Source: Octopus sinensis
Taxonomy: Eukaryota
Assembly: GCF_006345805.1 (NCBI RefSeq)
Contig: NC_043002.1
Coordinates: 13,888,001-13,952,000 of the forward strand
Reading direction: 5' to 3'
Length of the DNA stretch: 64,000 nt
Part shown: positions 1,856 to 61,544 of the stretch, piece after piece
How positions within the stretch are numbered: position 1 is the stretch's first letter
Layout of the letters: every line of letters begins with the position of its first letter
Translations under genes and position numbers: made by a program
The notes under the pieces: model-generated
What the model saw: the letters and a program-made list of their open reading frames with translations, nothing else
What the model was told of the DNA's origin: nothing
Database searches by the model: none

Positions 1856-4116
1856 CAACGTTAATTATTGTTACTAGTTTTGCAGATTGTGCTGTCATTA
1901 GTGATTGCAGCTTTTCACAAACAACAAATTTGAAAATTAATCAATATGTACAGATATTATCTGATTAATGTGATATACAACCGATTCATTATATAATACA
2001 TTTTAGTGATGGACAAGAGAATAGAGTCATGTTAAGCTGTTACTAGGCTCTTATGCATTGCCTATTGCCTATATCTTAATTATGATCAATTTTAACACGA
2101 TGATAGTTTGTGATATTTGCCGAAGCGTTTCGTTCAAAGGCTTTACACTCTGTTGCATTTTCTGAGGGAGCAGTGTTCTAACTGTCAACAGTTAGTTAAC
2201 TTTGAACAAATTGAAAGATTGTATCTGAATAAGAAATATTTATTTTGGTATTTTTTGAAATTTTTATTTTAAAACTAACATAATTCATGCTTCAGTATTA
2301 TAGAGAGAAATAATCACTGCTTTTATTGAAAAATTTGTTGCCTACAAAATGAAGTAATTAATTCAATGCGCAAATGCCAATCACAGAACAAAATTCCATA
2401 AAATATAAACTGCTACATTTCTGTGTAATTTTTGCCATCTCTACGGGTTTTCTAAACACATCATTATTAATGCGATCAAGTTTAATTATGCAGCAATTTT
2501 ACCGTCATATTTTTAATTAATGGTGCCTCTGCGAAAACAATTTCCCAAAACAAGAAAAAAAATAATAATGTAATTAGTTTGTAATTTTAGCATAGCTTGA
2601 AGCATAGCTTTTAGCTATAATATTGTTAATGATGGCTATGCTTTTAATATGACAAAATTCATGTACACACGGAAAGTTTTCTGATATTATCTTAGTATCG
2701 GGGAAAGAAATATCGTATTTAAAAGCCGAGAAAATGGCTTTAGGCAAACTGGTGCTCTGCTGACCCTCTAGATATTTGCTGAATTACAAATGGGTATTTC
2801 GATTTTTTTTTTGTTTGATTGAACAGATAGCAAATGTTTCAAACAGATATTGCAGAGAACATTAAATTCTGTTAAAATGGTGGACGTTACACAAGTAATG
2901 CAGCTTTGTTATTTAACCCATCTTCACTCGTTGAAGTGAGCACTAAACTTATAATTAGTTTTGAGCAATATGGCAGATGGAAAGTGCCTCAAGGGAGCGC
3001 TCTGCATACTAAAAACGAATCTGGTTTGGATTTCATTAATAATATAGCGAGTTGAACAGCCTCAATCAATACAGATTTTCCAAGTCATTAGTTGAAAATA
3101 CATCCCTTGAGCATGTTTAAAATTTAAAAAACTACCAGGAATGTTCACTGCAAGAAGACTAGTCAAAGTAAATTGTTGCAGAATATTGAAAATACAGATT
3201 GAAAGTGGGCTGATATTTAAAGAGAGATCTTGCAAAGAAATACAATAGACACATTTCCGTCTGACTAACCCTCCTCAGTAAAGCCTTTGGCAACGTTTCA
3301 GTTGTCAATCTAAGAAGTGATCAGAATATATATAAATAGAGAGAACGTAATGACGCTGTTTTCGAACCATTGCAATCTGAGCGAGGTAAAATACTGAAAA
3401 GCACTGACTGTATAGTGAATATACATACGGTAGGGTCTCTCCCTAATAAGTAATACTGTGGACTAAAAAAAACTACAAACATCTAAGATGACGTAAGAAA
3501 TAGATAGAGAAACAGATCTCGTCCCTGTAGTTGTTTAAATTGTAAAAATACACTTGCGAGTGGAGTAACTTAGTTGATAGATACTTGTGACAAAACGACA
3601 ATGCAGATCCTACACTTTACATATTTTTCAAAAACAGCGATCAACTAAGTTTGTGGGAGATATCCTGCTTCTGCCTTTTCGTTTTTTAACTGTTATAAAA
3701 TGTGTGTAAATTAAAAAAGCAAAATGCTTACTCTCTCTCTTTTACTTTTTTCAGTCATTTGACTGCGGCCATGCTGGGGCACCGCCTTTTAGTCGAGCAA
3801 ATCAACCCCGGGACTTATTCTTTGTAAGCCCAGTACTTATTCTATCGGTCTCTTTTGCCGAACCGCTAAGTGACGGGGACGTAAACACACCAGTATCGGT
3901 TGTCAAGCAATGCTAGGGGGACAAACACAGACACACAAACACACACACACACACATACATTTATATACATATATACGACAGGCTTCTTTCAGTTTCCGTC
4001 TACCAAATCCATTCACAAGGCTTTGGTCGGCCCGGGGCTATAGCAGAAGACACTTGCCCAAGATGCCACTCAGTGGGACTGAACCCGGAACCATGTGGTT
4101 GGTTAGCAAGCTACTT

Positions 4117-6435
4117 TATTTCATAACATTTGCCATTAAGGCAGTACATAGAGTAAGTTAGCTTTGCGGGCTGGACGAGGACATTAATGAAGTGAATGAT
4201 AATGAAAGAAAGATGATGGGGATGGGAGAAGACAAAAAGCGCCCGCCGACTTCTGCTTCTCTAAAACATTGTTCTTTTAAAAACTAACACAAAACGAGGT
4301 ATTAAACCTCTTACAACTTTTTCAATGTTTGGACTTAGCAGTCCATTACTAATAACAACATAGTTCAATAATTACATATATAAATACAATATACGAAGCC
4401 CCTCCTCCCAGACCTCGCTTATACTTCCCTTAGGAATGCGCCAGCTCTAGGTCGGGGCCCCTCAAGTCGTATCACAATTTGACTCGTCCTCGAAATAACT
4501 TGTGTCCACACCCTCCACCATCAACCACGCCTCCCTCAGAACGTAATCGAGTTCCGAGTTAGCGTCGCCCGGGACCAAGCTATAATCCTCATTGAACTCC
4601 TTCAGCCCAAGCGTCACGGCTTCCACATCTACCTGCGGAGGCCATTCGGGGTCCTGTGTGAAGGCTAAAGGTGCTCCCTTGTGGTGCTTTTCCATCACCT
4701 TTTCAATCTCCCCGCCTCTATAGAAGAGGATCAATACCTCGTTTTTGTTCGGGTGCGGGATATTCAATTCTTTCGTTGGCGGCACAGTTCCCGCCAACGG
4801 TATTTCTTCTTCTGTCGGTGGCACAACCCCAACCGACGTAGTTCCGGGACATTCCGGTGCTATGTCACCGACAGCCGGTAATGTCCCGTTTCTCTTCCTC
4901 TTTCTCTTTTTTTTCTTTTCAACTGAGGGAGGGTGCGTCTCCTCCGTGGCCGGAAGATTCGCCTTTCCCTCCTCATCCCTAGTATCCTTTGGTGAGCACC
5001 CATTGTTGCTCACCTTCCTCTTTCGGCTTCTGTTTGAGGAGTCCTCTGCTTCCTCGGCCGTTATCATTCCCTCTTCTACAGGGGTTTCACTTAACTGTTC
5101 CGGGATCCTATTTTGTTCCCGGGGACAGTTCTTCTTTATATGGCCGGACTCCAAACACCGATGACACTTAGCGGGGCGACCCTCAAGCATCACCGGGTAC
5201 CTGCACCCGGCCATTTTCAAAAAATCTGGAAGAACCAGATTGGCTGATTGGGTCCAAAGGTTCAAAATTGCTTTTGACCCAACCCAAGCAGCCGCAGGAA
5301 GAACTTTTACATTAAGGAGCTTAGTTTCGCTGCTACCCAGACCCCGGCGGATAGTCTCCTCTATCCACTCGGGTTCTATCCCGGGTGGCAGCCCGCAAAT
5401 CCAAGCTTTCGCCAGTCTCTTTTTTTGGTACGTGGGCAGGAATAAAATTTCCTTACCCACCAGGGATTTGCTAGCAAATTTTCAAGCCTCTTCAGGGGTG
5501 TCAAATAGCAACCACACCGTTGCATATTTGACACCCCTGGAAATGAATTTAATTGTTGGCAAATATTCTGCCAACTCCTTTTCAATTGCCGTCTTTTCGA
5601 ATAGGGCGATGGTGTCGAGTGCCTTGGAGTAGGTTCTCAACACCACCGTCCTATCTTCACGATCTTTTAACCACTTTTTAGGCGGTATGATTTCCCATTC
5701 CAAAATTTTGTCATTTTTCATAGCCATGTTTTTTTTTTTTTTTTTTGTATTTATATTCAAATTAAACTTAAAAAGCGAGAAGAAAAAAGTTCAAAAGTCC
5801 AAATAAAATTTGATAGATTTTTGAAAAAACAAAAAGGAGAAAGCACAACAGAAGGGAAGAAATCAACGGAAAGTCGCAACAAACAAAAAAAAACAAAAGG
5901 GGGAGTTAAATGAAGTTCAAAAGAAAGTTAATAAACAGAAAAAAACACAGCAAAAATCTTCTGGCCTTACGGTACTCCCGGCCTTATTTGAACCTGGAAC
6001 GCCGCAACTGTAACACAACCTCCACGAAAATGGGTCCGAAAGGTAATCCAAAAGTGGCTTATTTTTATAATTTTCTTGCGAAGTACTCTGACAAGGGAAT
6101 AAATTCAACAAACCCAAACACAGCACTGGCTACCGCCAACGGTAATTTTAACAGTAACTGTATTGGGTTCCGAGGATACGCCCCTCCGCTGTTTTTTTTT
6201 TCCAATAAACACAAAAACAAAGCAGCCGCCGAGAGCAGGCGAAATTGTCTCAGAGTTGGACACAACTTACTGAAATAATAATTAGCACGCAATAAATTGT
6301 GCCCAACTCACAATAAACAAAATCACTCACCTCGACAACTCTCTGTTTTTGGTCTTTATTCTATAATTGGACGGAGCTGGTTGACTCACATCCACTCTGG
6401 CTCAACAGGAAGCAACTGACTAACTGCGCATGTGT
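4117..6435 (-). mobile_element. ORF1-only non-autonomous non-LTR retroelement (half-LINE-like), apparently full length, element 1
   Basis: Perfect 15 bp TSD gttagcaagctactt (4102-4116, 6436-6450); ~700 bp 5' UTR; single ORF with CX2CX4HX4C; ~345 bp 3' UTR ending at AATAAA across the junction; no RT or endonuclease sequence. Confidence 0.85.
4462..5727 (-). pseudogene. LINE ORF1/gag-like nucleic-acid-binding protein, ~421 codons with one in-frame TGA at 5482-5484
   Basis: Listed ORFs 5482..5760 and 4462..5460 are in the same frame (FDTPEEA*KFASKSLVGKEILF). Zinc knuckle CHRCLESGHIKKNC, basic tract KKKKRKRKR, ATG at 5727. Confidence 0.85.
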
Positions 6436-6572
6436 GTTAGCAAGCTACTTACCACACAGCCACTCCTGCGCCTATGCTTAGTAGCATTTCTTTACCAACC
6501 GTGTACCTACCTAATATTCATATTCGGCGTGGTTATAGATATATGTTCTCTTTGTTGATATATATTAACTGT

Positions 6573-9873: not shown

Positions 9874-10452
9874 ACTTTCCTTCCTGCGAAAAGCAAATCA
9901 ATTAAAATTCTGAGATCTTTTCGCAGAGGGGTAAAAAATGGTAACAAAAACAGGACAGTAACGACAGTACAAATTATAAACGGTAAAAGACAGGACAAGG
10001 AAAAACAAGATAAGGAGGGCTGTTAACGCCGAACGAAAAAAAGTATTGCGAACGCAGATTCTTTTATGAACGACGAGCGGAGCAAAAAGAATTGTCGTCC
10101 ATACCTTGAGAGGGTCAGGCCAGAAAGACAGCAGCAGAAGTCTCGTCGCGGGTAAACGACGGGAGGGGGGAGGAGGAGCAAGAGAAAGGGAGCGAAGGGG
10201 AATGGCTGCGAGGAAACCATGAAGAATGGCTGCGAGGAAACCATGAGAGAGTGAAGAATGAGAGAGAGGAAGAGACAAGTTAAGTAGAGGAAAAGGAAAT
10301 CAAAGAATGAAGGCTGAGAAAGGGATGGGACAGAAAGGTTAAGAGTGTGCATCAAAGTTAATATATATATACAGAAGGAGATATATTTAAGAATTTAGAA
10401 ACATATCTGGGAGGAATAACTGACCTGTCTGTCAGACATTTTCATATATATA

Positions 10453-10490
<38 letters not shown>

Positions 10491-10494
<4 letters not shown>

Positions 10495-11112
10495 AGTAAA
10501 ATCAGTCGCCACATCAAAGCGGCTGTTGAATGTTGCTATTAATTTAACCCCAGGCAGATTATCCGCCAGGTGTGGAAGCAAAATACTACAACACCTCGAG
10601 CAGGTAATAAAGATCGCAAGATTGACTCCGTTTCGAGCTATTTGGCCCATTCTCAGTAGCGAGCACCTGTACGCCAGAACGATAGCCAGAGTTCGCTAAC
10701 GGTAACAATATATTGCAAACAAAGTGACCATTAGTCGCTGATTTGCAACAAGCAGAGTAGCTATTTGTAAAATCTCACAAAGAGACCAGAGTAGTAACTA
10801 CACTATACAGCAAAGCCAGTCGCCACCTCGAAGTGGCTGACTGTTACAACCCTAACCCCTGATTATCCGCGAGACTCTGCACCCATTATTTATAATATAT
10901 TATTAGCAGAGTGCTCTGGCTATCGTACGATTGCTCGCGGCTGAGGATGGGCCAAGTCAGCTCGAAACTGAGTCAGTCGCGCGATCCTAGTACCTGTAAC
11001 AGGGTGGTAGGGTTTCGTACGCCCTGCTAAGCAGCTGGTGGAGAATCTGCCTGGGTTAAACTAGTAGTAACATTCAACAGCCACTTTGATATCGCGACTG
11101 GCTTTACTGTTT
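10491..11112. repeat. Inverted pair of ~210 bp diverged repeat arms with a partial third copy between them
   Basis: 10491-10699 is the reverse complement of 10903-11112 (roughly 75% identity by eye); ~10778-10840 repeats the outer end of the arm. Confidence 0.85.
10936..10981 (+). ncRNA. Hammerhead-like motif with intact core but poor stem I
   Basis: CUGAGGA 10941-10947, stem II gggc/gctc, GAAAC-UGA-GUC 10964-10974. The mirror copy at 10620-10660 (-) has CUGAGAA. Confidence 0.45.
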
Positions 11113-11119
11113 AGTATTG

Positions 11120-11181
11120 TTACTAATCTGGTCTCTTCGTTTTGCTAAATTACTAATCTGGTCTCTTCGTTTTGCTAAATT
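11120..11181. repeat. Perfect 30 bp tandem duplication
   Basis: ttactaatctggtctcttcgttttgctaaa present twice. Confidence 0.95.
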
Positions 11182-13099
11182 CAGTCAGGCGGCATGGGTC
11201 GGCCCGCGACAATAGCAGTACTCATTTGCCCATGTTACAGCATAGCACGATTGAACCATGGTGTTGCAAATCGGTTTGTTAATTGTCTATAGCTTGATAT
11301 CTGAGGTGTAAGTTCACGCTGCTCTCATAGCGCCAAGATCTGAAACAGATTCCATTTGATATCCCGAGTCTCCAGGGATATCATCACATACATCTCTGCG
11401 TGTATCTATACATTTACTTCATATAAATAATTAAACAAAATCCCCTGAAAATTAAGAAATAGTTTACAATAATTACAGGCACTTTTCTTCTCTTCAGAAC
11501 AATATTAGGAATATAGGAAAAAATATCCTTTGCTCAAAAATGCAAGAAAACTGCTGAAGATTTAAGAAATTTACGAGAAGAACAAGTTGGCCAATATTTT
11601 ATCCATAAGATCATTTCTCTGCTCCACATGAGATTTAGTGCAGATATAAACCGGAAATTGATACATTAGTTCCTATCTCTATGTCCTTTGCAGTATAAGA
11701 GAAATCAGATAGCTCCAAATAGAAATCGGTATAACGTCGTAGATAAAACTCACAGAAAAATTAATATTTATTGCATCGGAGTGTTCTGAATTCCTTTCAT
11801 AATTAATATTCGTAATGAAAAGTTTCAGGAGAATACATTTGCTATTGTATATCATGAATGAACAAGCCATTTAATCAGGCATCAGCTTACATCCCGCTGC
11901 CATGTGTCGGCCATAAAATATATAGAAGTCAAATAACGGAATTATATTCAATTGCTACAGAATTTAGCCTACAACATGAAATCTTTCGTTTCATTAAAAA
12001 CACGCTGCATCAAAACCCAGAAATCTAAAAGATCTGATAAGTGGGGCTGTTATTATACTGACACCATCGTAAGATCTTTATCGGGTTTCAGAAGCTAAAA
12101 ATTACTCTCGAATTTAGTACTTCTCATGTGTGAAGGCATTTAAGCTAGTGGGTAGAGTATTGCACTGACGAACACAACATTGTGATTTCGAACCCTGGAC
12201 CGGGCGGCGCGTTGCTTTATTGGGCACAATAATCGTTTTCCTATTCTGCAACTCAATTTAGCTCTTAACCTGTAACTTTCAGAGGGCGGCCGCGGTTGTT
12301 GTGATCTCGGTCACATTTATATCACGACAGTAAACCGGATGACCAGCCCTATAATTCCTAGTACTTGAATCAGTATTGTATAGGGGTTGATACCGATGAC
12401 GCATCTGTCATAATATGCACATAGAAAGTTCCTCTCCAGGGCAAAGATTCGATCAAGGCAGACAGGAAGTTTTACCCTTTTGTAAATCTCGGTTTTGAAA
12501 TCACAACATTTTTTCAACAAAAAAGGCTAAGTTAATGGTCTATAGCTTGATATCTTAGATGTAAGTTCACGTTGACCTCATTGCGCAAAGATCTGAAACA
12601 GATGCCACTTGTTATCTCGAGTTTCCAGAAATTTCATCACTTCAGCCGCTTAACTCGGTATTTTCAAATGAATCTAAAGCAAAGATGGCCTTAGTGGGAT
12701 GCAAACTCAGATGGCAAAGAGCTTGATTTTCATCTCACTTTCTGACGTCACTTCGCTACTTACGTACTGTCGACATATATCACTGGGGAATTGCAATATA
12801 TCTAACGTTATTAAATGTAAATAAAACATAGCGAGCCGTATATCAGCTACACGGAAGTTAATTCAACAACACAATATCTACGTCTTGATCAAATTAGCAG
12901 CTCAAGCTGAAAGTCTCTCCTCACCTCAAATCATACTCCTCTGTCTCAAAACATACGTATTTAGCCAATGTGACTCTATGTCCGTATTGTAACATAAGAA
13001 ACATAGAGGTTGAATCTTGTTTGGAATTTGATCACGGCTGATCTCAGATTAAACGACAAAGCAACAACAACAACAAGAAAATAACGGAAAAAGAGTGTA

Positions 13100-14913: not shown

Positions 14914-15146
14914 TATTTTTTACTACCCACAAGGGGCTAAACACAGAGAGGACAAACAAGGACAGACAAACGGATTAAGTCGATTATATCGACCCCAGGG
15001 TGTAACTGGTACTTAATTTATCGACCCTGAAAGGATGACGGGCAAAGTCGACCTCGGCGGAATTTGAACTCAGAACGTAGCGGCAGACGAAATACCGCTA
15101 TGCATTTCGCCCGGCGTGCTAACGTTTCTGCCAGCTCGCCGCCTTC
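14914..15146 (-). mobile_element. Family-B SINE, full length
   Basis: Matches the other family-B copies; 12 bp TSD actgattatacc at 14902-14913 and 15147-15158. Confidence 0.9.
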
Positions 15147-23332: not shown

Positions 23333-23521
23333 GGCGCAGGAGTGGCTGTGTGGTAAGTAGCTTGCTTACTAACCACATGGTTCCGGGTTCACTCCTACTG
23401 CGTGGCACCTTGGCCAAGTGTCTTATACTATAGCTGCGGGTCGACCAAAGGCTTGTGAGTGGTTTGGTAGACTAAAGCGGATTTGCTCGACTAAAAGGCG
23501 ATGCTTCAGCATGGCCGCAGA
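23333..23521 (+). mobile_element. Family-A SINE, internally deleted
   Basis: Head ggcgcaggagtggctgtgtgg joined directly to the tail ctcgactaaaaggcg...catggccgcag. Confidence 0.8.
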
Positions 23522-24550: not shown

Positions 24551-24783
24551 GAAGGCGGCGAGCTGGCAGAACCGTTAGAACGCGAGGTGATATGCGCAGC
24601 CGTATTTCGTCTGCCATTACGCTCTGAGTTCAAATTCCGCCGAGGTCGACTTTGCCTTTCATCCTTTCGGGATCGATAAATTAAGTACCGGTTACGCACT
24701 GGGGTCGATGTAAGCGACTTAATCCGTTTGTCTGTCCTTGTTTGTCCTCTCTGTGTTTTGCCCCTTGTGGGTAATAAAGAAAC
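24551..24783 (+). mobile_element. Family-B SINE, full length
   Basis: 16 bp TSD aggtatatgtgtgtat at 24535-24550 and 24784-24799; ends ...ccttgtgggtaataaagaaac. Confidence 0.92.
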
Positions 24784-44308: not shown

Positions 44309-44535
44309 GGCGAGCTGGCAGACACGTTAGCAGGCCGGGCGAAATGCGTAGCCGTATTTCGTCTGCCGTTACGTTCTGAGTTCAAATTCCACCGAGGTCG
44401 ACTTTGCCTTTCATCCTTTCGGGATCGATTACATAAGTAGCAGTTACGCACTGGGGTCGATATAATCGACTTAATCCGTTTGTCTGTCCTTGTTTGTCCT
44501 CTCTGTGTTTAGCCCCTTGTGGGTAGTAAAGAAAT
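44309..44535 (+). mobile_element. Family-B SINE
   Basis: Matches 24551-24783; no TSD seen. Confidence 0.88.
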
Positions 44536-59223: not shown

Positions 59224-60769
59224 ACGTACGGGTGAAGCGGTGAATAACGTAATTATGAATATGTAGGTTCAAACAGGAAGTTAGACTGCGGTGACGAGCA
59301 AAGGCCTGATAGCTGAACTACAGCAAATTCGTGAACTGGAGGTGGAGGACATGGACTACAGGAAGTTTAATGCCTTGTTGAGGAAGGAAAGAGAATGCTT
59401 AAGACTGACACCTCCGAAAGATGTGACGGAGAATGCAGAAAGAGGGATTATTACCTGTAAAACGTTGAATATAGCGACAAAGAGGGTGGAGATAGCGGCT
59501 GTGGAAGCAATAGAGGAGTGCTTAAGGGAAGTAAAAGGAGTAACTGCGTTCTATACCAGTAGACGAAGGTTCGGCACAGTGGAGGTGCGCTTCGTTAATG
59601 AGAACGAAACAAGGAAATACTCCACCGTAGCCTTGAGATCGGCACAGTGGGCACTGCTACCTACTTACAGAGACAGTCGTGCGGCCAGAGTGAGGATAGG
59701 GAGACTGACACCCGAAATTGACGAGGGCTGGCTTGTGGAAGCGATCCTCTATAATACAGATGAAAAAGCAGAGATCCTGATAATGTCGAAGACCACGGAG
59801 GTCAACTGGTGGGGCTATGGCCTGGACGTAATGGTCTATATCAGCCTATCTGACCTCCATAAAATTGTGGAAGAAATCATCCTACCAGATGAAACTAGAC
59901 TGCGAATCATGGTAGAGGGAAGATCGCCAATGTTTCGAATGTGGAGTAAGGGGGCACATGAAGGCCAAGTGTCCCCAGAAATACGAACAGGAAGTGGTGG
60001 AGAAGGAATGTCAGGAAGTAGAAAATGTAATAAGAGAGAAGGAAGTAGACTTTACTGAGGTAGAGAAGAAGAGAGGAAATAGGGAATCTCCACCGAAAAA
60101 GAAAAGAAAAGCGGAGAAAAAGGAAAAATAGAAAAGAATAAATGAAGCAAGGGGAGATCGAACACAAGAACCGGAACCTTCAGTAAGTAAGGAGGATTAG
60201 GAGGGACGGGAGAAATTGGAAAGCGAGCAACAAAGAAAGATAAAGACACCAGCAATAAGGGCAGAGAGTGAAGAGATACGGCAGAGAAGGCCACATAAAG
60301 GGAAACACGAAAGAATGATGATGATGTACGAGAAGAATGTAGAAATAGACAAACGAATTGCAAAAATGGAATGGCGTGATAAGAATAAAACTGGCAGACA
60401 AAGAAGAGAATCGAAATATGAAAGCGGTGCTACGAGATGACGAGAAAGCAGCGAGACTGAAAGAGATATTTGAAAATAGGATGGATGGTACACCATTGCG
60501 GTTTCAATATGATGAATTGCCACCAGTGATAAATTTTGAAGATCTAATGGGTTTTTTTTTAAATATAAAAACGATAATACAAACTGGATTGTAAAATGGA
60601 ACTTTCTACTTTGCGGGGTAGAAAGCCATTTCATTGCCATAATTTTTCACACCTCATAATTCATTCGTTAATCGTTTTATGTACCTCACGTTTGTGTTGT
60701 CTGTACTTGTAATGTCTCTTCTATATATAAGGCTTTATACCTGTAATAAAGAGAGAATTACTATCTTTG
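59224..60769 (+). mobile_element. ORF1-only retroelement, element 2a (decayed relative of element 1)
   Basis: Protein homology to element 1; ORF followed by a ~160 bp 3' UTR ending AATAAAG; no RT. The 5' boundary is approximate and abuts a family-A SINE fragment. Confidence 0.75.
59351..60594 (+). pseudogene. ORF1/gag-like protein, ~414 codons, 2 frameshifts and 2 TAG stops
   Basis: LLPTYRDSRAARVRIGRLTPEIDEGWLVEAI aligns with FLPTYQKKRLAKAWICGLPPGIEPEWIEETI of element 1; CFECGVRGHMKAKC at 59931-59972 follows a frameshift. Confidence 0.82.
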
Positions 60770-61486
60770 CTTCGGAAATCGAACTGGCCGAAGAGGAGAT
60801 GGAGAGACTATTTAGAGTGGAGGAAGAAAAGAGAGAACAAAGTGTTCAAAATAAAGGAAAGAAAATACAAGGAGGAAATGGAGTATGGTATTACGTGAGC
60901 TACCCAAAGAATGTAGAAACAAAGAAGAAGATTGTCAAGTTTAATCAAATAGTAAAAGTGAAAGTACCATCATACACATACGCAGAGGATATGAAGGCGA
61001 TAGTGATGGAAAATGAAAATTACAAGAGACTGAAAGAAATGTGTGGAGATAGCATTTACTCACCAGGATTGAGGGTGGAATTCAAAGAATTGCCACCAGT
61101 TGTGGATCTAATGGAAATTGAACAATTGATGAAGTAATGCTAAAAAGAAAATAAGTATGTTAAATTGACAGGAAAAAAGAAAAGGAAAATAAAAAAAAAG
61201 AAAAAGTAAAGTGTTTTATGTTATGTTTTAAAAAATTATTGCAAAATAGAACAATTGTAGATAATGTATATAACGGTTCAAATAATTGCAATGGTATGTA
61301 ACATGATAATTAATTGTTACGTAACTACATGATAATGGACTGTAGTAAAACAAATTAATGGTACTGCATGTGATGAGGGGCGCATGCAGCCATTCATAAC
61401 CTCATTGTTATATAATCTTCTCATTCGTATTCGTTTTATGTATTCTCCCCTGTGTGGTGCCCTGTCCTTGTGGCTAATAAAGAAAC
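60770..61486 (+). mobile_element. 5'-truncated related element 2b (ORF C-terminus and 3' UTR)
   Basis: The open frame to 61137 is homologous to the 2a C-terminus; flanked by agaa(t/g)tactatctttg at 60754-60769 and 61487-61502. Confidence 0.72.
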
Positions 61487-61503
61487 AGAAGTACTATCTT
61501 TGA

Positions 61504-61544
61504 GGACCACCAGGGGTCCGCGGACACTAGGTTGAGAACTATTG
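61504..61544. mobile_element. Possible right end of a hAT-type MITE
   Basis: ggggtccgcggacactaggttgagaactattg resembles the ggttgagaaccactg termini of hAT MITEs; no left end found. Confidence 0.35.

What the first reader, a model, noticed from the sequence alone, without database searches (positions are those of the whole stretch)
4102..6450. Complete ORF1-only retroelement with a 15 bp TSD and no reverse transcriptase
Seen: a perfect 15 bp TSD bounds a 2319 bp insert that splits a SINE head. The insert has a 5' UTR, one ~421-codon ORF (RRM-like N-terminus, CCHC knuckle, basic tract, C-terminal domain), a 3' UTR and AATAAA, and nothing else. Known: 10-20 bp TSDs mark target-primed retrotransposition by APE-type LINEs, and ORF1-only HAL1 elements exist in vertebrates. 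Inference: this unit moved as is, using another LINE's ORF2 in trans, which would make it a cephalopod half-LINE family that keeps its RNA chaperone gene.
Basis: partly seen in the sequence, partly recalled or inferred. Interest (0 to 1): 0.85.

Follow-up and report, generated by a model that had tools for sequence, protein, structure and literature searches.

The report
ORF1-only LINE copy inside an octopus SINE
A 2.3 kb retrotransposon copy that carries only the RNA-binding first gene of an L1/Tx1-type LINE, and no reverse transcriptase, sits inside an octopus SINE between a perfect 15 bp duplication; it is a cephalopod counterpart of the known "half-LINE" parasites, and its gene is already broken by a stop codon.

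Summary
The insertion is real. Window 4117-6435 (2319 bp, sense on the minus strand) splits a SINE, and intact SINE copies read through the exact 15 bp duplication once. The insert is 708 nt of 5' UTR, a 421-codon frame and 345 nt of 3' UTR, with no poly(A) tail and no trace of an endonuclease or RT. The frame is not intact: codon 82 is TGA.

The protein is two RRMs plus one CCHC knuckle ("Type I" ORF1p). Distant homologues in four octopod loci and two metagenome contigs are followed directly by an APE+RT ORF2 that resembles human L1 ORF2p, so this is a LINE ORF1 of the L1/Tx1 group. The C-terminal "domain" matches no canonical ORF1 C-terminal domain and evolves almost neutrally.

Only two close relatives could be fetched, both from Octopus sinensis. 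Neither has an ORF2, and dN/dS on the RRM-CCHC part is 0.16-0.33. All three copies begin right after the same SINE-head position, which suggests target specificity or co-transcription with the SINE. Their 3' ends could not be matched.

Verdict: a half-LINE reading is partly supported. A multi-copy family with fixed ends remains unproven.

The parts
4102..4116 (.). Target-site duplication, copy next to the element's 3' end (GTTAGCAAGCTACTT on the + strand; SINE sense nt 30-44)
   Evidence: Exact 15/15 repeat. It is present once in intact SINE copies.
6436..6450 (.). Target-site duplication, copy next to the element's 5' end
4117..6435 (-). The whole inserted element, 2319 bp, ORF1-only LINE derivative
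   Evidence: The empty-site alignment defines both ends. It is the only copy in the window.
5728..6435 (-). 5' UTR, 708 nt, ending in an A18 run directly before the ATG (T-run 5729-5746 on the + strand)
   Evidence: Sequence read. Sense nt 403-708 align to O. sinensis L002 contiguously with the ORF, so leader and ORF belong together.
4462..5727 (-). ORF1 frame, 421 codons plus stop, with one internal stop
   Evidence: Translation. 63% aa identity to P0001 and 75% to the L002 copy.
5482..5484 (-). In-frame TGA at codon 82; L001 and L002 have CAC (His) here
5431..5649 (-). RRM 1 (aa ~27-99)
   Evidence: AlphaFold2 model of aa 1-204, pLDDT 88. Foldseek top hits are all tandem-RRM proteins with probability about 1.
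5185..5418 (-). RRM 2 (aa ~104-181)
   Evidence: There is also a weak profile match to IMP3 RRM.
5125..5166 (-). CCHC zinc knuckle (C188-C201, KCHRCLESGHIKKNC)
   Evidence: Pfam zf-CCHC, E=0.009, below the cut-off. The family profile hits retroviral nucleocapsid knuckles at E=1e-5.
4753..5124 (-). Low-complexity acidic/basic linker, including KKKKRKRKR (4891-4917)
   Evidence: It aligns with the long disordered linkers of family members.
4465..4752 (-). C-terminal region (aa 326-421) of unknown nature
   Evidence: Conserved in L002 (54% aa) but with dN/dS 0.91. No match to the canonical ORF1 C-terminal domain HMM or to P0028.
4117..4461 (-). 3' UTR, 345 nt, no poly(A). The last ~38 nt resemble the conserved 3' terminal block of octopod L1/Tx1-type LINEs
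   Evidence: Sequence. In the global-alignment test, 18 of 5000 random windows reach the observed score; a local-score test was not significant.
6436..6474 (-). Head (5' end, sense nt 1-44) of the host SINE, upstream of the element
3737..4116 (-). Remainder of the host SINE (sense nt 30 to the end), downstream of the element

Best explanation
The insert is a non-autonomous, ORF1-only derivative of an octopod LINE of the L1/Tx1 group, that is, a 'half-LINE'.

Shown:
- It entered a SINE through a staggered break that left a 15 bp duplication.
- It carries a LINE leader and a Type I ORF1 (RRM-RRM-CCHC, then a disordered basic linker and a divergent tail).
- It carries a short trailer whose terminus resembles the conserved LINE 3' block.
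- It has no ORF2.

Inferred:
- Its RNA was reverse-transcribed at the target by the endonuclease/RT of an autonomous relative acting in trans. The + strand would have been nicked at 5'-...GCTACTT^ACCACA-3', with the 3' OH at window 4116 priming cDNA synthesis on the element's 3' end.
- ORF1p, while it was intact, coated and chaperoned its own RNA in cis.
- The two older Octopus sinensis relatives start immediately after the same SINE-head position. The lineage therefore probably targets this SINE site, or is co-transcribed from the SINE head and carries it along. Both behaviours are known for target-specific Tx1-type and R2-type LINEs.

This particular copy is now dead, because of the TGA at codon 82.
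For: - TSD and empty site.
- No ORF2: no other long ORF, no tblastn match of six ORF2 queries to the window at E<=1e-3, and none inside the element even at E<=50 (best 0.2).
- ORF1 identity: 78 remote homologues and 286 with the core profile. The fold is tandem RRM and the knuckle is confirmed.
- Homologous ORF1s lie directly upstream of Exo_endo_phos+RVT_1 ORF2s in L003/L004 and in octopod loci L005, L007, L008 and L009.
- That ORF2 matches human L1 ORF2p at E=1e-59 over EN+RT, against 1e-22 for R2.
- Type I ORF1p is the form reported for Tx1-like L1 elements of non-mammals (PMC5203782).
- Close relatives L001 and L002 have no ORF2 downstream.
- dN/dS on the RRM-CCHC part is 0.33, 0.16 and 0.21 in the three pairs.
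- The shared 5' junction with SINE nt ~6-44 has unrelated upstream flanks in all three copies.
- The 3' terminal block resemblance is.
- A second, unrelated ORF1-only element with the canonical C-terminal domain and the LINE 3' block lies at 59.2-61.5 kb. ORF2 loss is therefore recurrent here.
- Tx1 target preference and co-transcription with targets: PMC4494074.
- The young age of this copy is suggested by the perfect TSD and by a single disabling change in 421 codons.
Against: - Only one copy has both ends defined.
- The 345 nt 3' UTR has no match in L001, L002 or any other locus held. The candidate 3' end of L002 is not significantly similar.
- L001 and L002 lack the downstream SINE part that a targeted insertion should leave.
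- The wider family normally has ORF2 (4 loci), and no autonomous partner sharing this SINE target or a close ORF1 was found.
- The 3'-block resemblance is significant in one scoring scheme and not in another.
- The C-terminal region looks unconstrained. That would also fit a deletion that fused ORF1 to unrelated sequence.
- Purifying selection on ORF1 would also be seen if the masters were full-length LINEs.
Confidence: 0.55

Rival explanations
1. One-off deletion derivative. A full-length L1/Tx1-type LINE (ORF1+ORF2) lost ORF2 in this one copy, either during reverse transcription (template jump) or by a later internal deletion. No ORF1-only lineage propagates. L001 and L002 would be independently decayed fragments.
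For: - In the wider family ORF1 is normally followed by ORF2 (L003, L004, L005, L007, L008, L009).
- The window and L002 sequences stop being alignable about 13 nt after the ORF1 stop.
- The 3' ends are not matched.
- The C-terminal region lacks the canonical domain and has dN/dS 0.91, as expected if a breakpoint lies in the 3' part of ORF1.
Against: - All three copies of the close family lack ORF2.
- The unusual C-terminal region and the stop position are shared by the window copy and L002 despite about 16-23% nt divergence. The loss of the canonical C-terminus therefore predates their split.
- There is no ORF2 remnant at all.
- The perfect TSD and near-intact frame argue against much post-insertion decay.
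Confidence: 0.22
2. The SINE head is part of the mobile unit. The element would be a chimeric retroposon whose RNA starts at the 5' end of a SINE (read-through or SINE-promoter transcript). The apparent 15 bp TSD in the window would arise because the head-bearing cDNA annealed to a resident SINE head, not because of true endonuclease site specificity.
For: - All three copies begin exactly at the SINE 5' end, with unrelated flanks upstream.
- L001 and L002 have no SINE body downstream.
- Their heads share variants (GCTTGCTTCC) that are absent from the window's head.
- 5' additions of target or small-RNA sequence, and transcription from flanking sequence, are documented for Tx1-mobilised SINEU elements (PMC4494074).
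Against: - In the window the head is identical to the local SINE consensus, and it continues into a full SINE body after the element with an exact 15 bp overlap. The simplest explanation is insertion into an intact SINE.
- The 3' parts of L001 and L002 are truncated or unresolved, so absence of the SINE body is weak evidence.
- GCTTGCTTC also occurs in another SINE subfamily (L005).
Confidence: 0.15
3. Processed pseudogene (retrocopy) of a host gene that was itself domesticated from a LINE ORF1, for example a gene like LOC115225585 of O. sinensis.
For: - P0001 is annotated as a single-exon protein-coding gene in O. sinensis.
- dN/dS is below 1 on the RRM-CCHC part.
- The TSD fits LINE-mediated retrocopying.
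Against: - There is no poly(A) tail.
- P0001 has lost the first Cys of its knuckle and its locus is truncated.
- L002 is frameshifted.
- The same SINE-head junction occurs in three copies.
- The 3' terminus is LINE-like.
- None of the window's ORFs is in the protein collection.
Confidence: 0.05

Closest known systems
HAL1 ('half-L1') elements of mammals
   Same: A non-autonomous L1-group derivative that keeps the 5' UTR, ORF1 and 3' end but has no ORF2, and must use ORF2p in trans. HAL1 arose independently several times (PMC5753468).
   Different: HAL1 ORF1p is the L1 Type II protein (coiled coil, RRM, CTD; Transposase_22), and copies end in poly(A). Here ORF1p is Type I (two RRMs plus CCHC), there is no poly(A) tail, the host is a cephalopod, and a multi-copy family is not yet shown.
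HeT-A of Drosophila telomeres (own knowledge, not tested here)
   Same: A non-LTR element that encodes only a Gag-like ORF1 with CCHC knuckles. It depends on the RT of related elements (TART/TAHRE) and has a fixed kind of target.
   Different: HeT-A belongs to the Jockey clade, targets chromosome ends, and is maintained as a host-beneficial telomere component. Nothing of that kind is indicated here.
Target-specific Tx1-clade LINEs (Tx1L, Keno, Mutsu, Kibi, Koshi) and their dependants such as SINEU
   Same: L1-group ORF2, Type I ORF1, preference for repeated targets, tandem arrays, and co-transcription with or 5' capture of target sequence (PMC4494074, PMC5203782). Octopod relatives show these traits: L005 lies between (ATT)n tracts and L008 is a 5273 bp tandem array.
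   Different: Those LINEs are autonomous, whereas this element has no ORF2. Its placement in the Tx1 clade rests on ORF1 type and ORF2 similarity of distant relatives, not on an RT phylogeny. A SINE head as target has not been described, to my knowledge.
RTE-2_OV and the RTE/Dong LINEs reported as the active LINEs of Octopus (PMC9115989)
   Same: Same host genus; LINEs with recent activity.
   Different: RTE elements have a single ORF with no ORF1 of this type. The family described here is a different LINE group and is not mentioned in that study.

Membership tests
HAL1-type half-LINE (ORF1-only L1-group derivative) | ORF1 homologous to the ORF1 of LINEs with an L1-type APE+RT ORF2 | tested here: met
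   Homologous ORF1s sit directly upstream of Exo_endo_phos+RVT_1 ORF2s. That ORF2 matches human L1 ORF2p at E=1e-59.
HAL1-type half-LINE (ORF1-only L1-group derivative) | No ORF2 between ORF1 and the 3' end, inside one TSD-bounded unit | tested here: met
HAL1-type half-LINE (ORF1-only L1-group derivative) | ORF1p of L1 Type II (coiled coil-RRM-CTD, Pfam Transposase_22) | tested here: not met
   No Transposase_22 hit. The fold is RRM-RRM-CCHC. It is therefore not a member of mammalian HAL1 proper, only the same kind of derivative.
HAL1-type half-LINE (ORF1-only L1-group derivative) | 3' poly(A) tail | tested here: not met
   The element ends ...ATGAAATA directly at the TSD.
HAL1-type half-LINE (ORF1-only L1-group derivative) | Multi-copy family with the same ends and different TSDs | tested here: inconclusive
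   Three copies share the 5' end. Only the window copy has a defined 3' end and TSD, and the 3' ends are not matched. No octopus genome can be searched by DNA with these tools, and the two metagenome scans were empty.
Type I ORF1p (Khazina and Weichenrieder classes, as summarised in PMC5203782) | At least one RRM | tested here: met
   AlphaFold2 pLDDT 88. Foldseek hits are SFPQ/NONO, raver1, IMP3 RRM12, U2AF65 and UP1, with probability about 1.
Type I ORF1p (Khazina and Weichenrieder classes, as summarised in PMC5203782) | CCHC zinc knuckle after the RRM | tested here: met
   C188-X2-C191-X4-H196-X4-C201. Pfam zf-CCHC is weak; the profile hit to nucleocapsid knuckles has E=1e-5.
Autonomous L1/Tx1-group LINE | Encodes an APE endonuclease and a reverse transcriptase | tested here: not met
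   No EN or RT similarity in the element or anywhere in the window.
Autonomous L1/Tx1-group LINE | RT phylogeny places the lineage in the Tx1 clade | not tested
   No reference RT set is available, and the element has no RT of its own. Only PDB similarity of a distant relative's ORF2 was obtained.
Target-specific LINE lineage | Independent copies at the same position of the same target sequence | tested here: inconclusive
   3 of 3 copies abut SINE sense nt ~44, but only the window copy has the target on both sides.
Processed pseudogene of a host mRNA | Poly(A) tail at the 3' end inside the TSD | tested here: not met
Processed pseudogene of a host mRNA | Intron-containing parental gene | not testable with these tools
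   No searchable octopus genome or transcriptome. The closest annotated protein, P0001, is a single-exon decayed copy.

The most novel reading that the evidence does not exclude
Octopods harbour a propagating lineage of ORF1-only half-LINEs of the Tx1/L1 group. The lineage keeps its RRM-RRM-CCHC chaperone under selection and borrows ORF2p from autonomous relatives. It homes specifically to one position in the head of the genome's most abundant SINE, possibly using the SINE head as its transcription start. This would be an interspersed-repeat analogue of Drosophila HeT-A and the first half-LINE described outside vertebrates and insects.
Probability: 0.3. Interest if true: 0.6.

Novelty: new member of a known kind. 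Interest (0 to 1): 0.38.

Why it matters
Cephalopod genomes are about half repeats, and their LINE biology is known mainly from RTE elements. A Type I ORF1 family of the L1/Tx1 group has not been described there, whether as autonomous copies, tandem arrays or ORF1-only derivatives.

If the ORF1-only lineage really propagates, it shows that half-LINE parasitism evolves outside mammals and with a different ORF1 architecture. It would also give a natural test of whether ORF1p is needed in cis when ORF2p comes in trans.

If the SINE-head junction reflects endonuclease specificity, it would be a new target class for target-specific LINEs and a possible source of SINE inactivation.

For annotation, these ORF1 copies are currently called as 'uncharacterized protein' genes and even fused into chimeric gene models (P0002).

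Tried and rejected
- AlphaFold2 on the whole 421 aa with a two-sequence alignment failed (pLDDT 32). Only the 204 aa core with 24 sequences gave a usable model.
- The first alignment-based homologue search was swamped by low-complexity words and returned 4 hits. The trimmed core worked.
- I suspected the C-terminal region was the end of an APE endonuclease (S-x-LDYVL resemblance seen by eye). No support came from Pfam or from tblastn with six ORF2 queries, so I rejected this.
- I tested homology of the C-terminal region to the canonical ORF1 C-terminal domain (LKxxFPxDVG motif). It does not score against HMMs built without it or against P0028 (E=0.21).
- I considered a chimera of a polyadenylated RNA and an ORF1 RNA, because of the A18 run before the ATG. 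I rejected it because L002 aligns across the run, and A-runs upstream of the ATG also occur in L002, L005 and L008.
- The L002 3' end against the window 3' end was not significant.
- The 3'-block similarity by local score was not significant. By global score it was: 18 of 5000 random windows reach the observed score.
- A degenerate second SINE head at the element's 5' end was not significant for the window copy (250 of 2000 random windows).
- The SINE head is not supported as tRNA-derived by ARAGORN or Rfam.
- Exact look-up of eight window ORF variants in the protein collection found none.
- Two metagenome DNA scans for family-specific words found nothing.
- P0003, the closest ORF1 outside the family, has no recorded contig.


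Full report
**1. The observation**

The 15-mer GTTAGCAAGCTACTT is present exactly at 4102-4116 and 6436-6450. It is SINE sequence, and there are six further near-matches in the window, so the repeat count alone proves little.

The decisive test is the empty site. Five other copies of the same SINE in the window read through the 15-mer once and continue ...ACTTACCACACAGCCACTCCTGCGCCT. The two flanks joined with a single copy of the repeat align without a gap to SINE copies in Octopus sinensis (397 nt, 92%). The insert is therefore window 4117-6435 (2319 bp), and the 15 bp are a genuine target-site duplication. No other copy of the insert exists in the window.

**2. Anatomy**

The element reads on the minus strand. 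From its 5' end it consists of:
- a 708 nt leader (6435-5728) ending in an A18 run directly before the ATG;
- a 421-codon frame (5727-4465, stop 4464-4462);
- a 345 nt trailer (4461-4117).

There is no poly(A) tail. The only AATAAA is formed across the junction with two target bases.

The frame has no frameshift but carries an in-frame TGA at codon 82 (5482-5484). Both relatives have CAC at that position.

**3. The protein**

- Pfam gives only a sub-threshold zf-CCHC hit.
- An exhaustive HMM search found 78 relatives. A trimmed core profile found 286.
- With a 24-sequence alignment, AlphaFold2 models residues 1-204 at pLDDT 88.
- Foldseek returns only tandem-RRM proteins (SFPQ/NONO, raver1, IMP3 RRM12, U2AF65, hnRNP A1 UP1) with probability about 1.
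- The profile also hits retroviral nucleocapsid knuckles.

The architecture is therefore RRM-RRM-CCHC, followed by a low-complexity acidic/basic linker (KKKKRKRKR at aa 271-279) and a 96-residue tail. This is the 'Type I' ORF1p, which the literature associates with Tx1-like members of the L1 group in non-mammalian animals (PMC5203782).

Relatives share a well-conserved C-terminal domain with the motif LKxxFPxDVG. The window's tail does not score against HMMs of that domain or against P0028. Its dN/dS against the only other copy that has it is 0.91. I treat it as an unverified, possibly unconstrained extension.

**4. It is a LINE ORF1**

In two long metagenome contigs the homologous ORF, including the canonical C-terminal domain, is followed directly by an ORF with Exo_endo_phos and RVT_1. 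That ORF2 matches human L1 ORF2p at E=1e-59 across EN and RT, against 1e-22 for R2.

In octopods the same arrangement is found four times:
- O. sinensis (L005: ORF1 9947-11809, degenerate ORF2 to 15110);
- Argonauta hians (L007);
- O. vulgaris (L008, a head-to-tail array with a 5273 bp period at 99.4% identity);
- O. bimaculoides (L009).

These LINEs end in a conserved block, CTCTGTGT..CCCCTTGTGG(G/C)TA(A/G)TAAAGAAA. L005 lies between (ATT)n tracts. Tandem arrays and repeat-associated insertion are typical of target-specific Tx1-type elements (PMC4494074). No RT phylogeny was done, so 'L1/Tx1 group' is as precise as the evidence allows.

**5. No ORF2 here**

Six ORF2 queries find nothing in the window at E<=1e-3 and nothing in the element even at E<=50 (best 0.2).

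The last ~38 nt of the element resemble the conserved LINE 3' block. In a global alignment test 18 of 5000 random windows reach the observed score. A local-score test was not significant, so this is suggestive only.

**6. Relatives of the close family**

Only two could be reached, both in O. sinensis:
- L001 (P0001, annotated LOC115225585): 63% aa identity, first knuckle Cys lost, truncated at element nt ~1603.
- L002: 77% nt identity over element nt 403-1963, with several frameshifts. It contributes an exon to the chimeric gene model P0002.

Neither has EN or RT downstream.

dN/dS on the RRM-CCHC module is 0.33 (window vs L002), 0.16 (window vs L001) and 0.21 (L001 vs L002). Most of the divergence therefore accumulated in lineages whose ORF1 was under selection.

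The window copy and L002 share the unusual C-terminal region, the stop position and about 13 nt beyond it. After that they cannot be aligned, and the candidate L002 terminus is not significantly similar. The ORF2-less state is thus common to all three copies, but a shared deletion junction and shared 3' ends are not demonstrated.

**7. An unexpected regularity**

In all three copies the element starts immediately after a SINE head that runs from the SINE's 5' end to sense nt ~44. The flanks upstream of the head are unrelated.

In the window the head is identical to the local SINE consensus, and the SINE body (nt 30 onward) follows the element. The simplest reading is an insertion into an intact SINE. 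In L001 and L002 no SINE body follows, but their 3' parts are truncated or unresolved.

Two readings remain:
- the lineage, through the partner's endonuclease, targets this SINE position;
- transcripts start in the upstream SINE head and carry it to new sites, as discussed for Tx1-dependent SINEU elements and for R2 (PMC4494074).

The two are compatible, because co-transcription with the target can reinforce targeted integration. Other lineages of the superfamily show no SINE head at their 5' ends.

**8. A second ORF1-only element in the same window**

At about 59.2-61.5 kb (+) lies a distantly related ORF1 (23% identity to the first, 31-34% to P0005, P0003 and P0028). It has a decayed knuckle, a linker and the canonical C-terminal domain (HMM E=1e-20). 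About 370 nt further on it ends in the conserved LINE 3' block, with no ORF2. A 5'-truncated second unit in tandem follows (60265-60769 aligns to 60814-61502). Loss of ORF2 with retention of ORF1 and the LINE terminus has therefore happened more than once in this genome.

**9. Interpretation**

The best-supported account is a half-LINE: a non-autonomous ORF1-only derivative of an octopod L1/Tx1-type LINE.
- It would have been mobilised by target-primed reverse transcription using ORF2p in trans. The first nick is on the + strand at ...GCTACTT^ACCACA, and the second lies 15 bp away.
- It was probably inserted recently, given the perfect TSD and a single disabling mutation.
- It is now inactive.

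What is shown: the insertion, the anatomy, the fold, the family relationship and the absence of ORF2. What is inferred: trans-mobilisation, the existence of a propagating ORF1-only family, and target specificity.

Rivals are a one-off deletion, a SINE-head chimera without true site specificity, and a retrocopy of a domesticated gene. They are weighed in the fields above.

**10. Comparison and novelty**

Functionally this is the same kind of element as mammalian HAL1 (PMC5753468) and, from my own knowledge, Drosophila HeT-A. It is not a member of HAL1 proper, because the ORF1 type differs and there is no poly(A) tail.

The octopus LINE literature I could search describes RTE and Dong elements, not this family (PMC9115989). 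I rate it a new member of a known kind, of moderate interest. The SINE-head junction is the feature most worth following up.

Noticed in passing
window 59230-61510 (+): A second, distantly related ORF1-only LINE derivative. It has an RRM-RRM core with a decayed knuckle (59291-60058), a linker, the canonical ORF1 C-terminal domain (60643-61134) and a 3' UTR ending in the conserved LINE block (61466-61510). There is no ORF2. Region 60265-60769 is an earlier, shorter tandem copy of the C-terminal domain plus 3' UTR unit.
   Followed up: partly
window 24763-24778 (+), 44515-44530 (+), 14919-14934 (-); L002 32246 (+), 40377 (-): Solo copies of the conserved LINE 3' terminal block CTCTGTGTTT.GCCCCTTGTGGGTA(A/G)TAAAGAAA. 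They are probably 5'-truncated LINE tails or SINEs that borrow this tail. What lies upstream of them was not examined.
   Followed up: no
L008 2438-17026 (Octopus vulgaris OX597840.1): A head-to-tail tandem array of at least three full-length ORF1+ORF2 LINEs, period 5273 bp, 99.4% identical, with an A30 run about 35 nt upstream of the ORF1 ATG. It looks like a very young or gene-converted array of a possibly active autonomous LINE.
   Followed up: partly
L005 9716-9778 and 15346-15380 (Octopus sinensis CM016872.1): A full-length, frameshifted LINE of the same superfamily is bounded on both sides by (ATT)n. This suggests microsatellite-targeted insertion, as in the Tx1-clade elements Kibi and Koshi.
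   Followed up: no
window 5729-5746: An A18 run (sense strand) directly before the ORF1 start codon. Shorter or longer A-runs sit upstream of the ATG in L002 (A9), L005 (A7) and L008 (A30), but not in L001, L006, L007, L009 or L010. Its function is unknown.
   Followed up: partly
window 6270-6330 (-): The 5' UTR contains a consensus-looking splice donor (GAG|GTGAGT) and, 61 nt later, an acceptor (TTATTATTTCAG|T). This may be chance. It was not tested and is not conserved in the L001/L002 alignment.
   Followed up: no
L002 10001-36638 (Octopus sinensis, protein P0002 'K02A2.6-like'): The annotated gene model joins an exon taken from the decayed ORF1 copy (aa 83-128 match the first 46 aa of the window's ORF1) to an rve integrase fragment about 20 kb away. 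This is most likely an annotation chimera of two transposon relics.
   Followed up: partly
window 6386-6435 (-); L001 9487-9536; L002 15738-15787: The first ~30 nt of the element weakly resemble a second, internally deleted SINE head (GCGCAG...TTAGTCAGTTGCTTCC). The resemblance is marginal for L001 (58 of 2000 random windows) and not significant for the window copy (250 of 2000). It could be a relic of an earlier round of 5' capture.
   Followed up: partly
window 3737-4116 with 6436-6474, and SINE copies located by their 15-mer matches at 23355, 29423, 30037, 33680, 45271 and 53161: At least seven copies of one ~400 bp SINE with an internal (TG)n/(TA)n tract lie in 64 kb. Its head has A/B-box-like sequence by eye, but ARAGORN and Rfam do not call it a tRNA.
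   Followed up: partly
L003, L004 (ENA sample ERZ21867824): One metagenome assembly holds most of the listed, mostly intact, ORF1 homologues on contigs up to 900 kb, with adjacent intact EN/RT ORF2. This is an apparently active L1/Tx1-type family in an unidentified eukaryote present in that sample.
   Followed up: no
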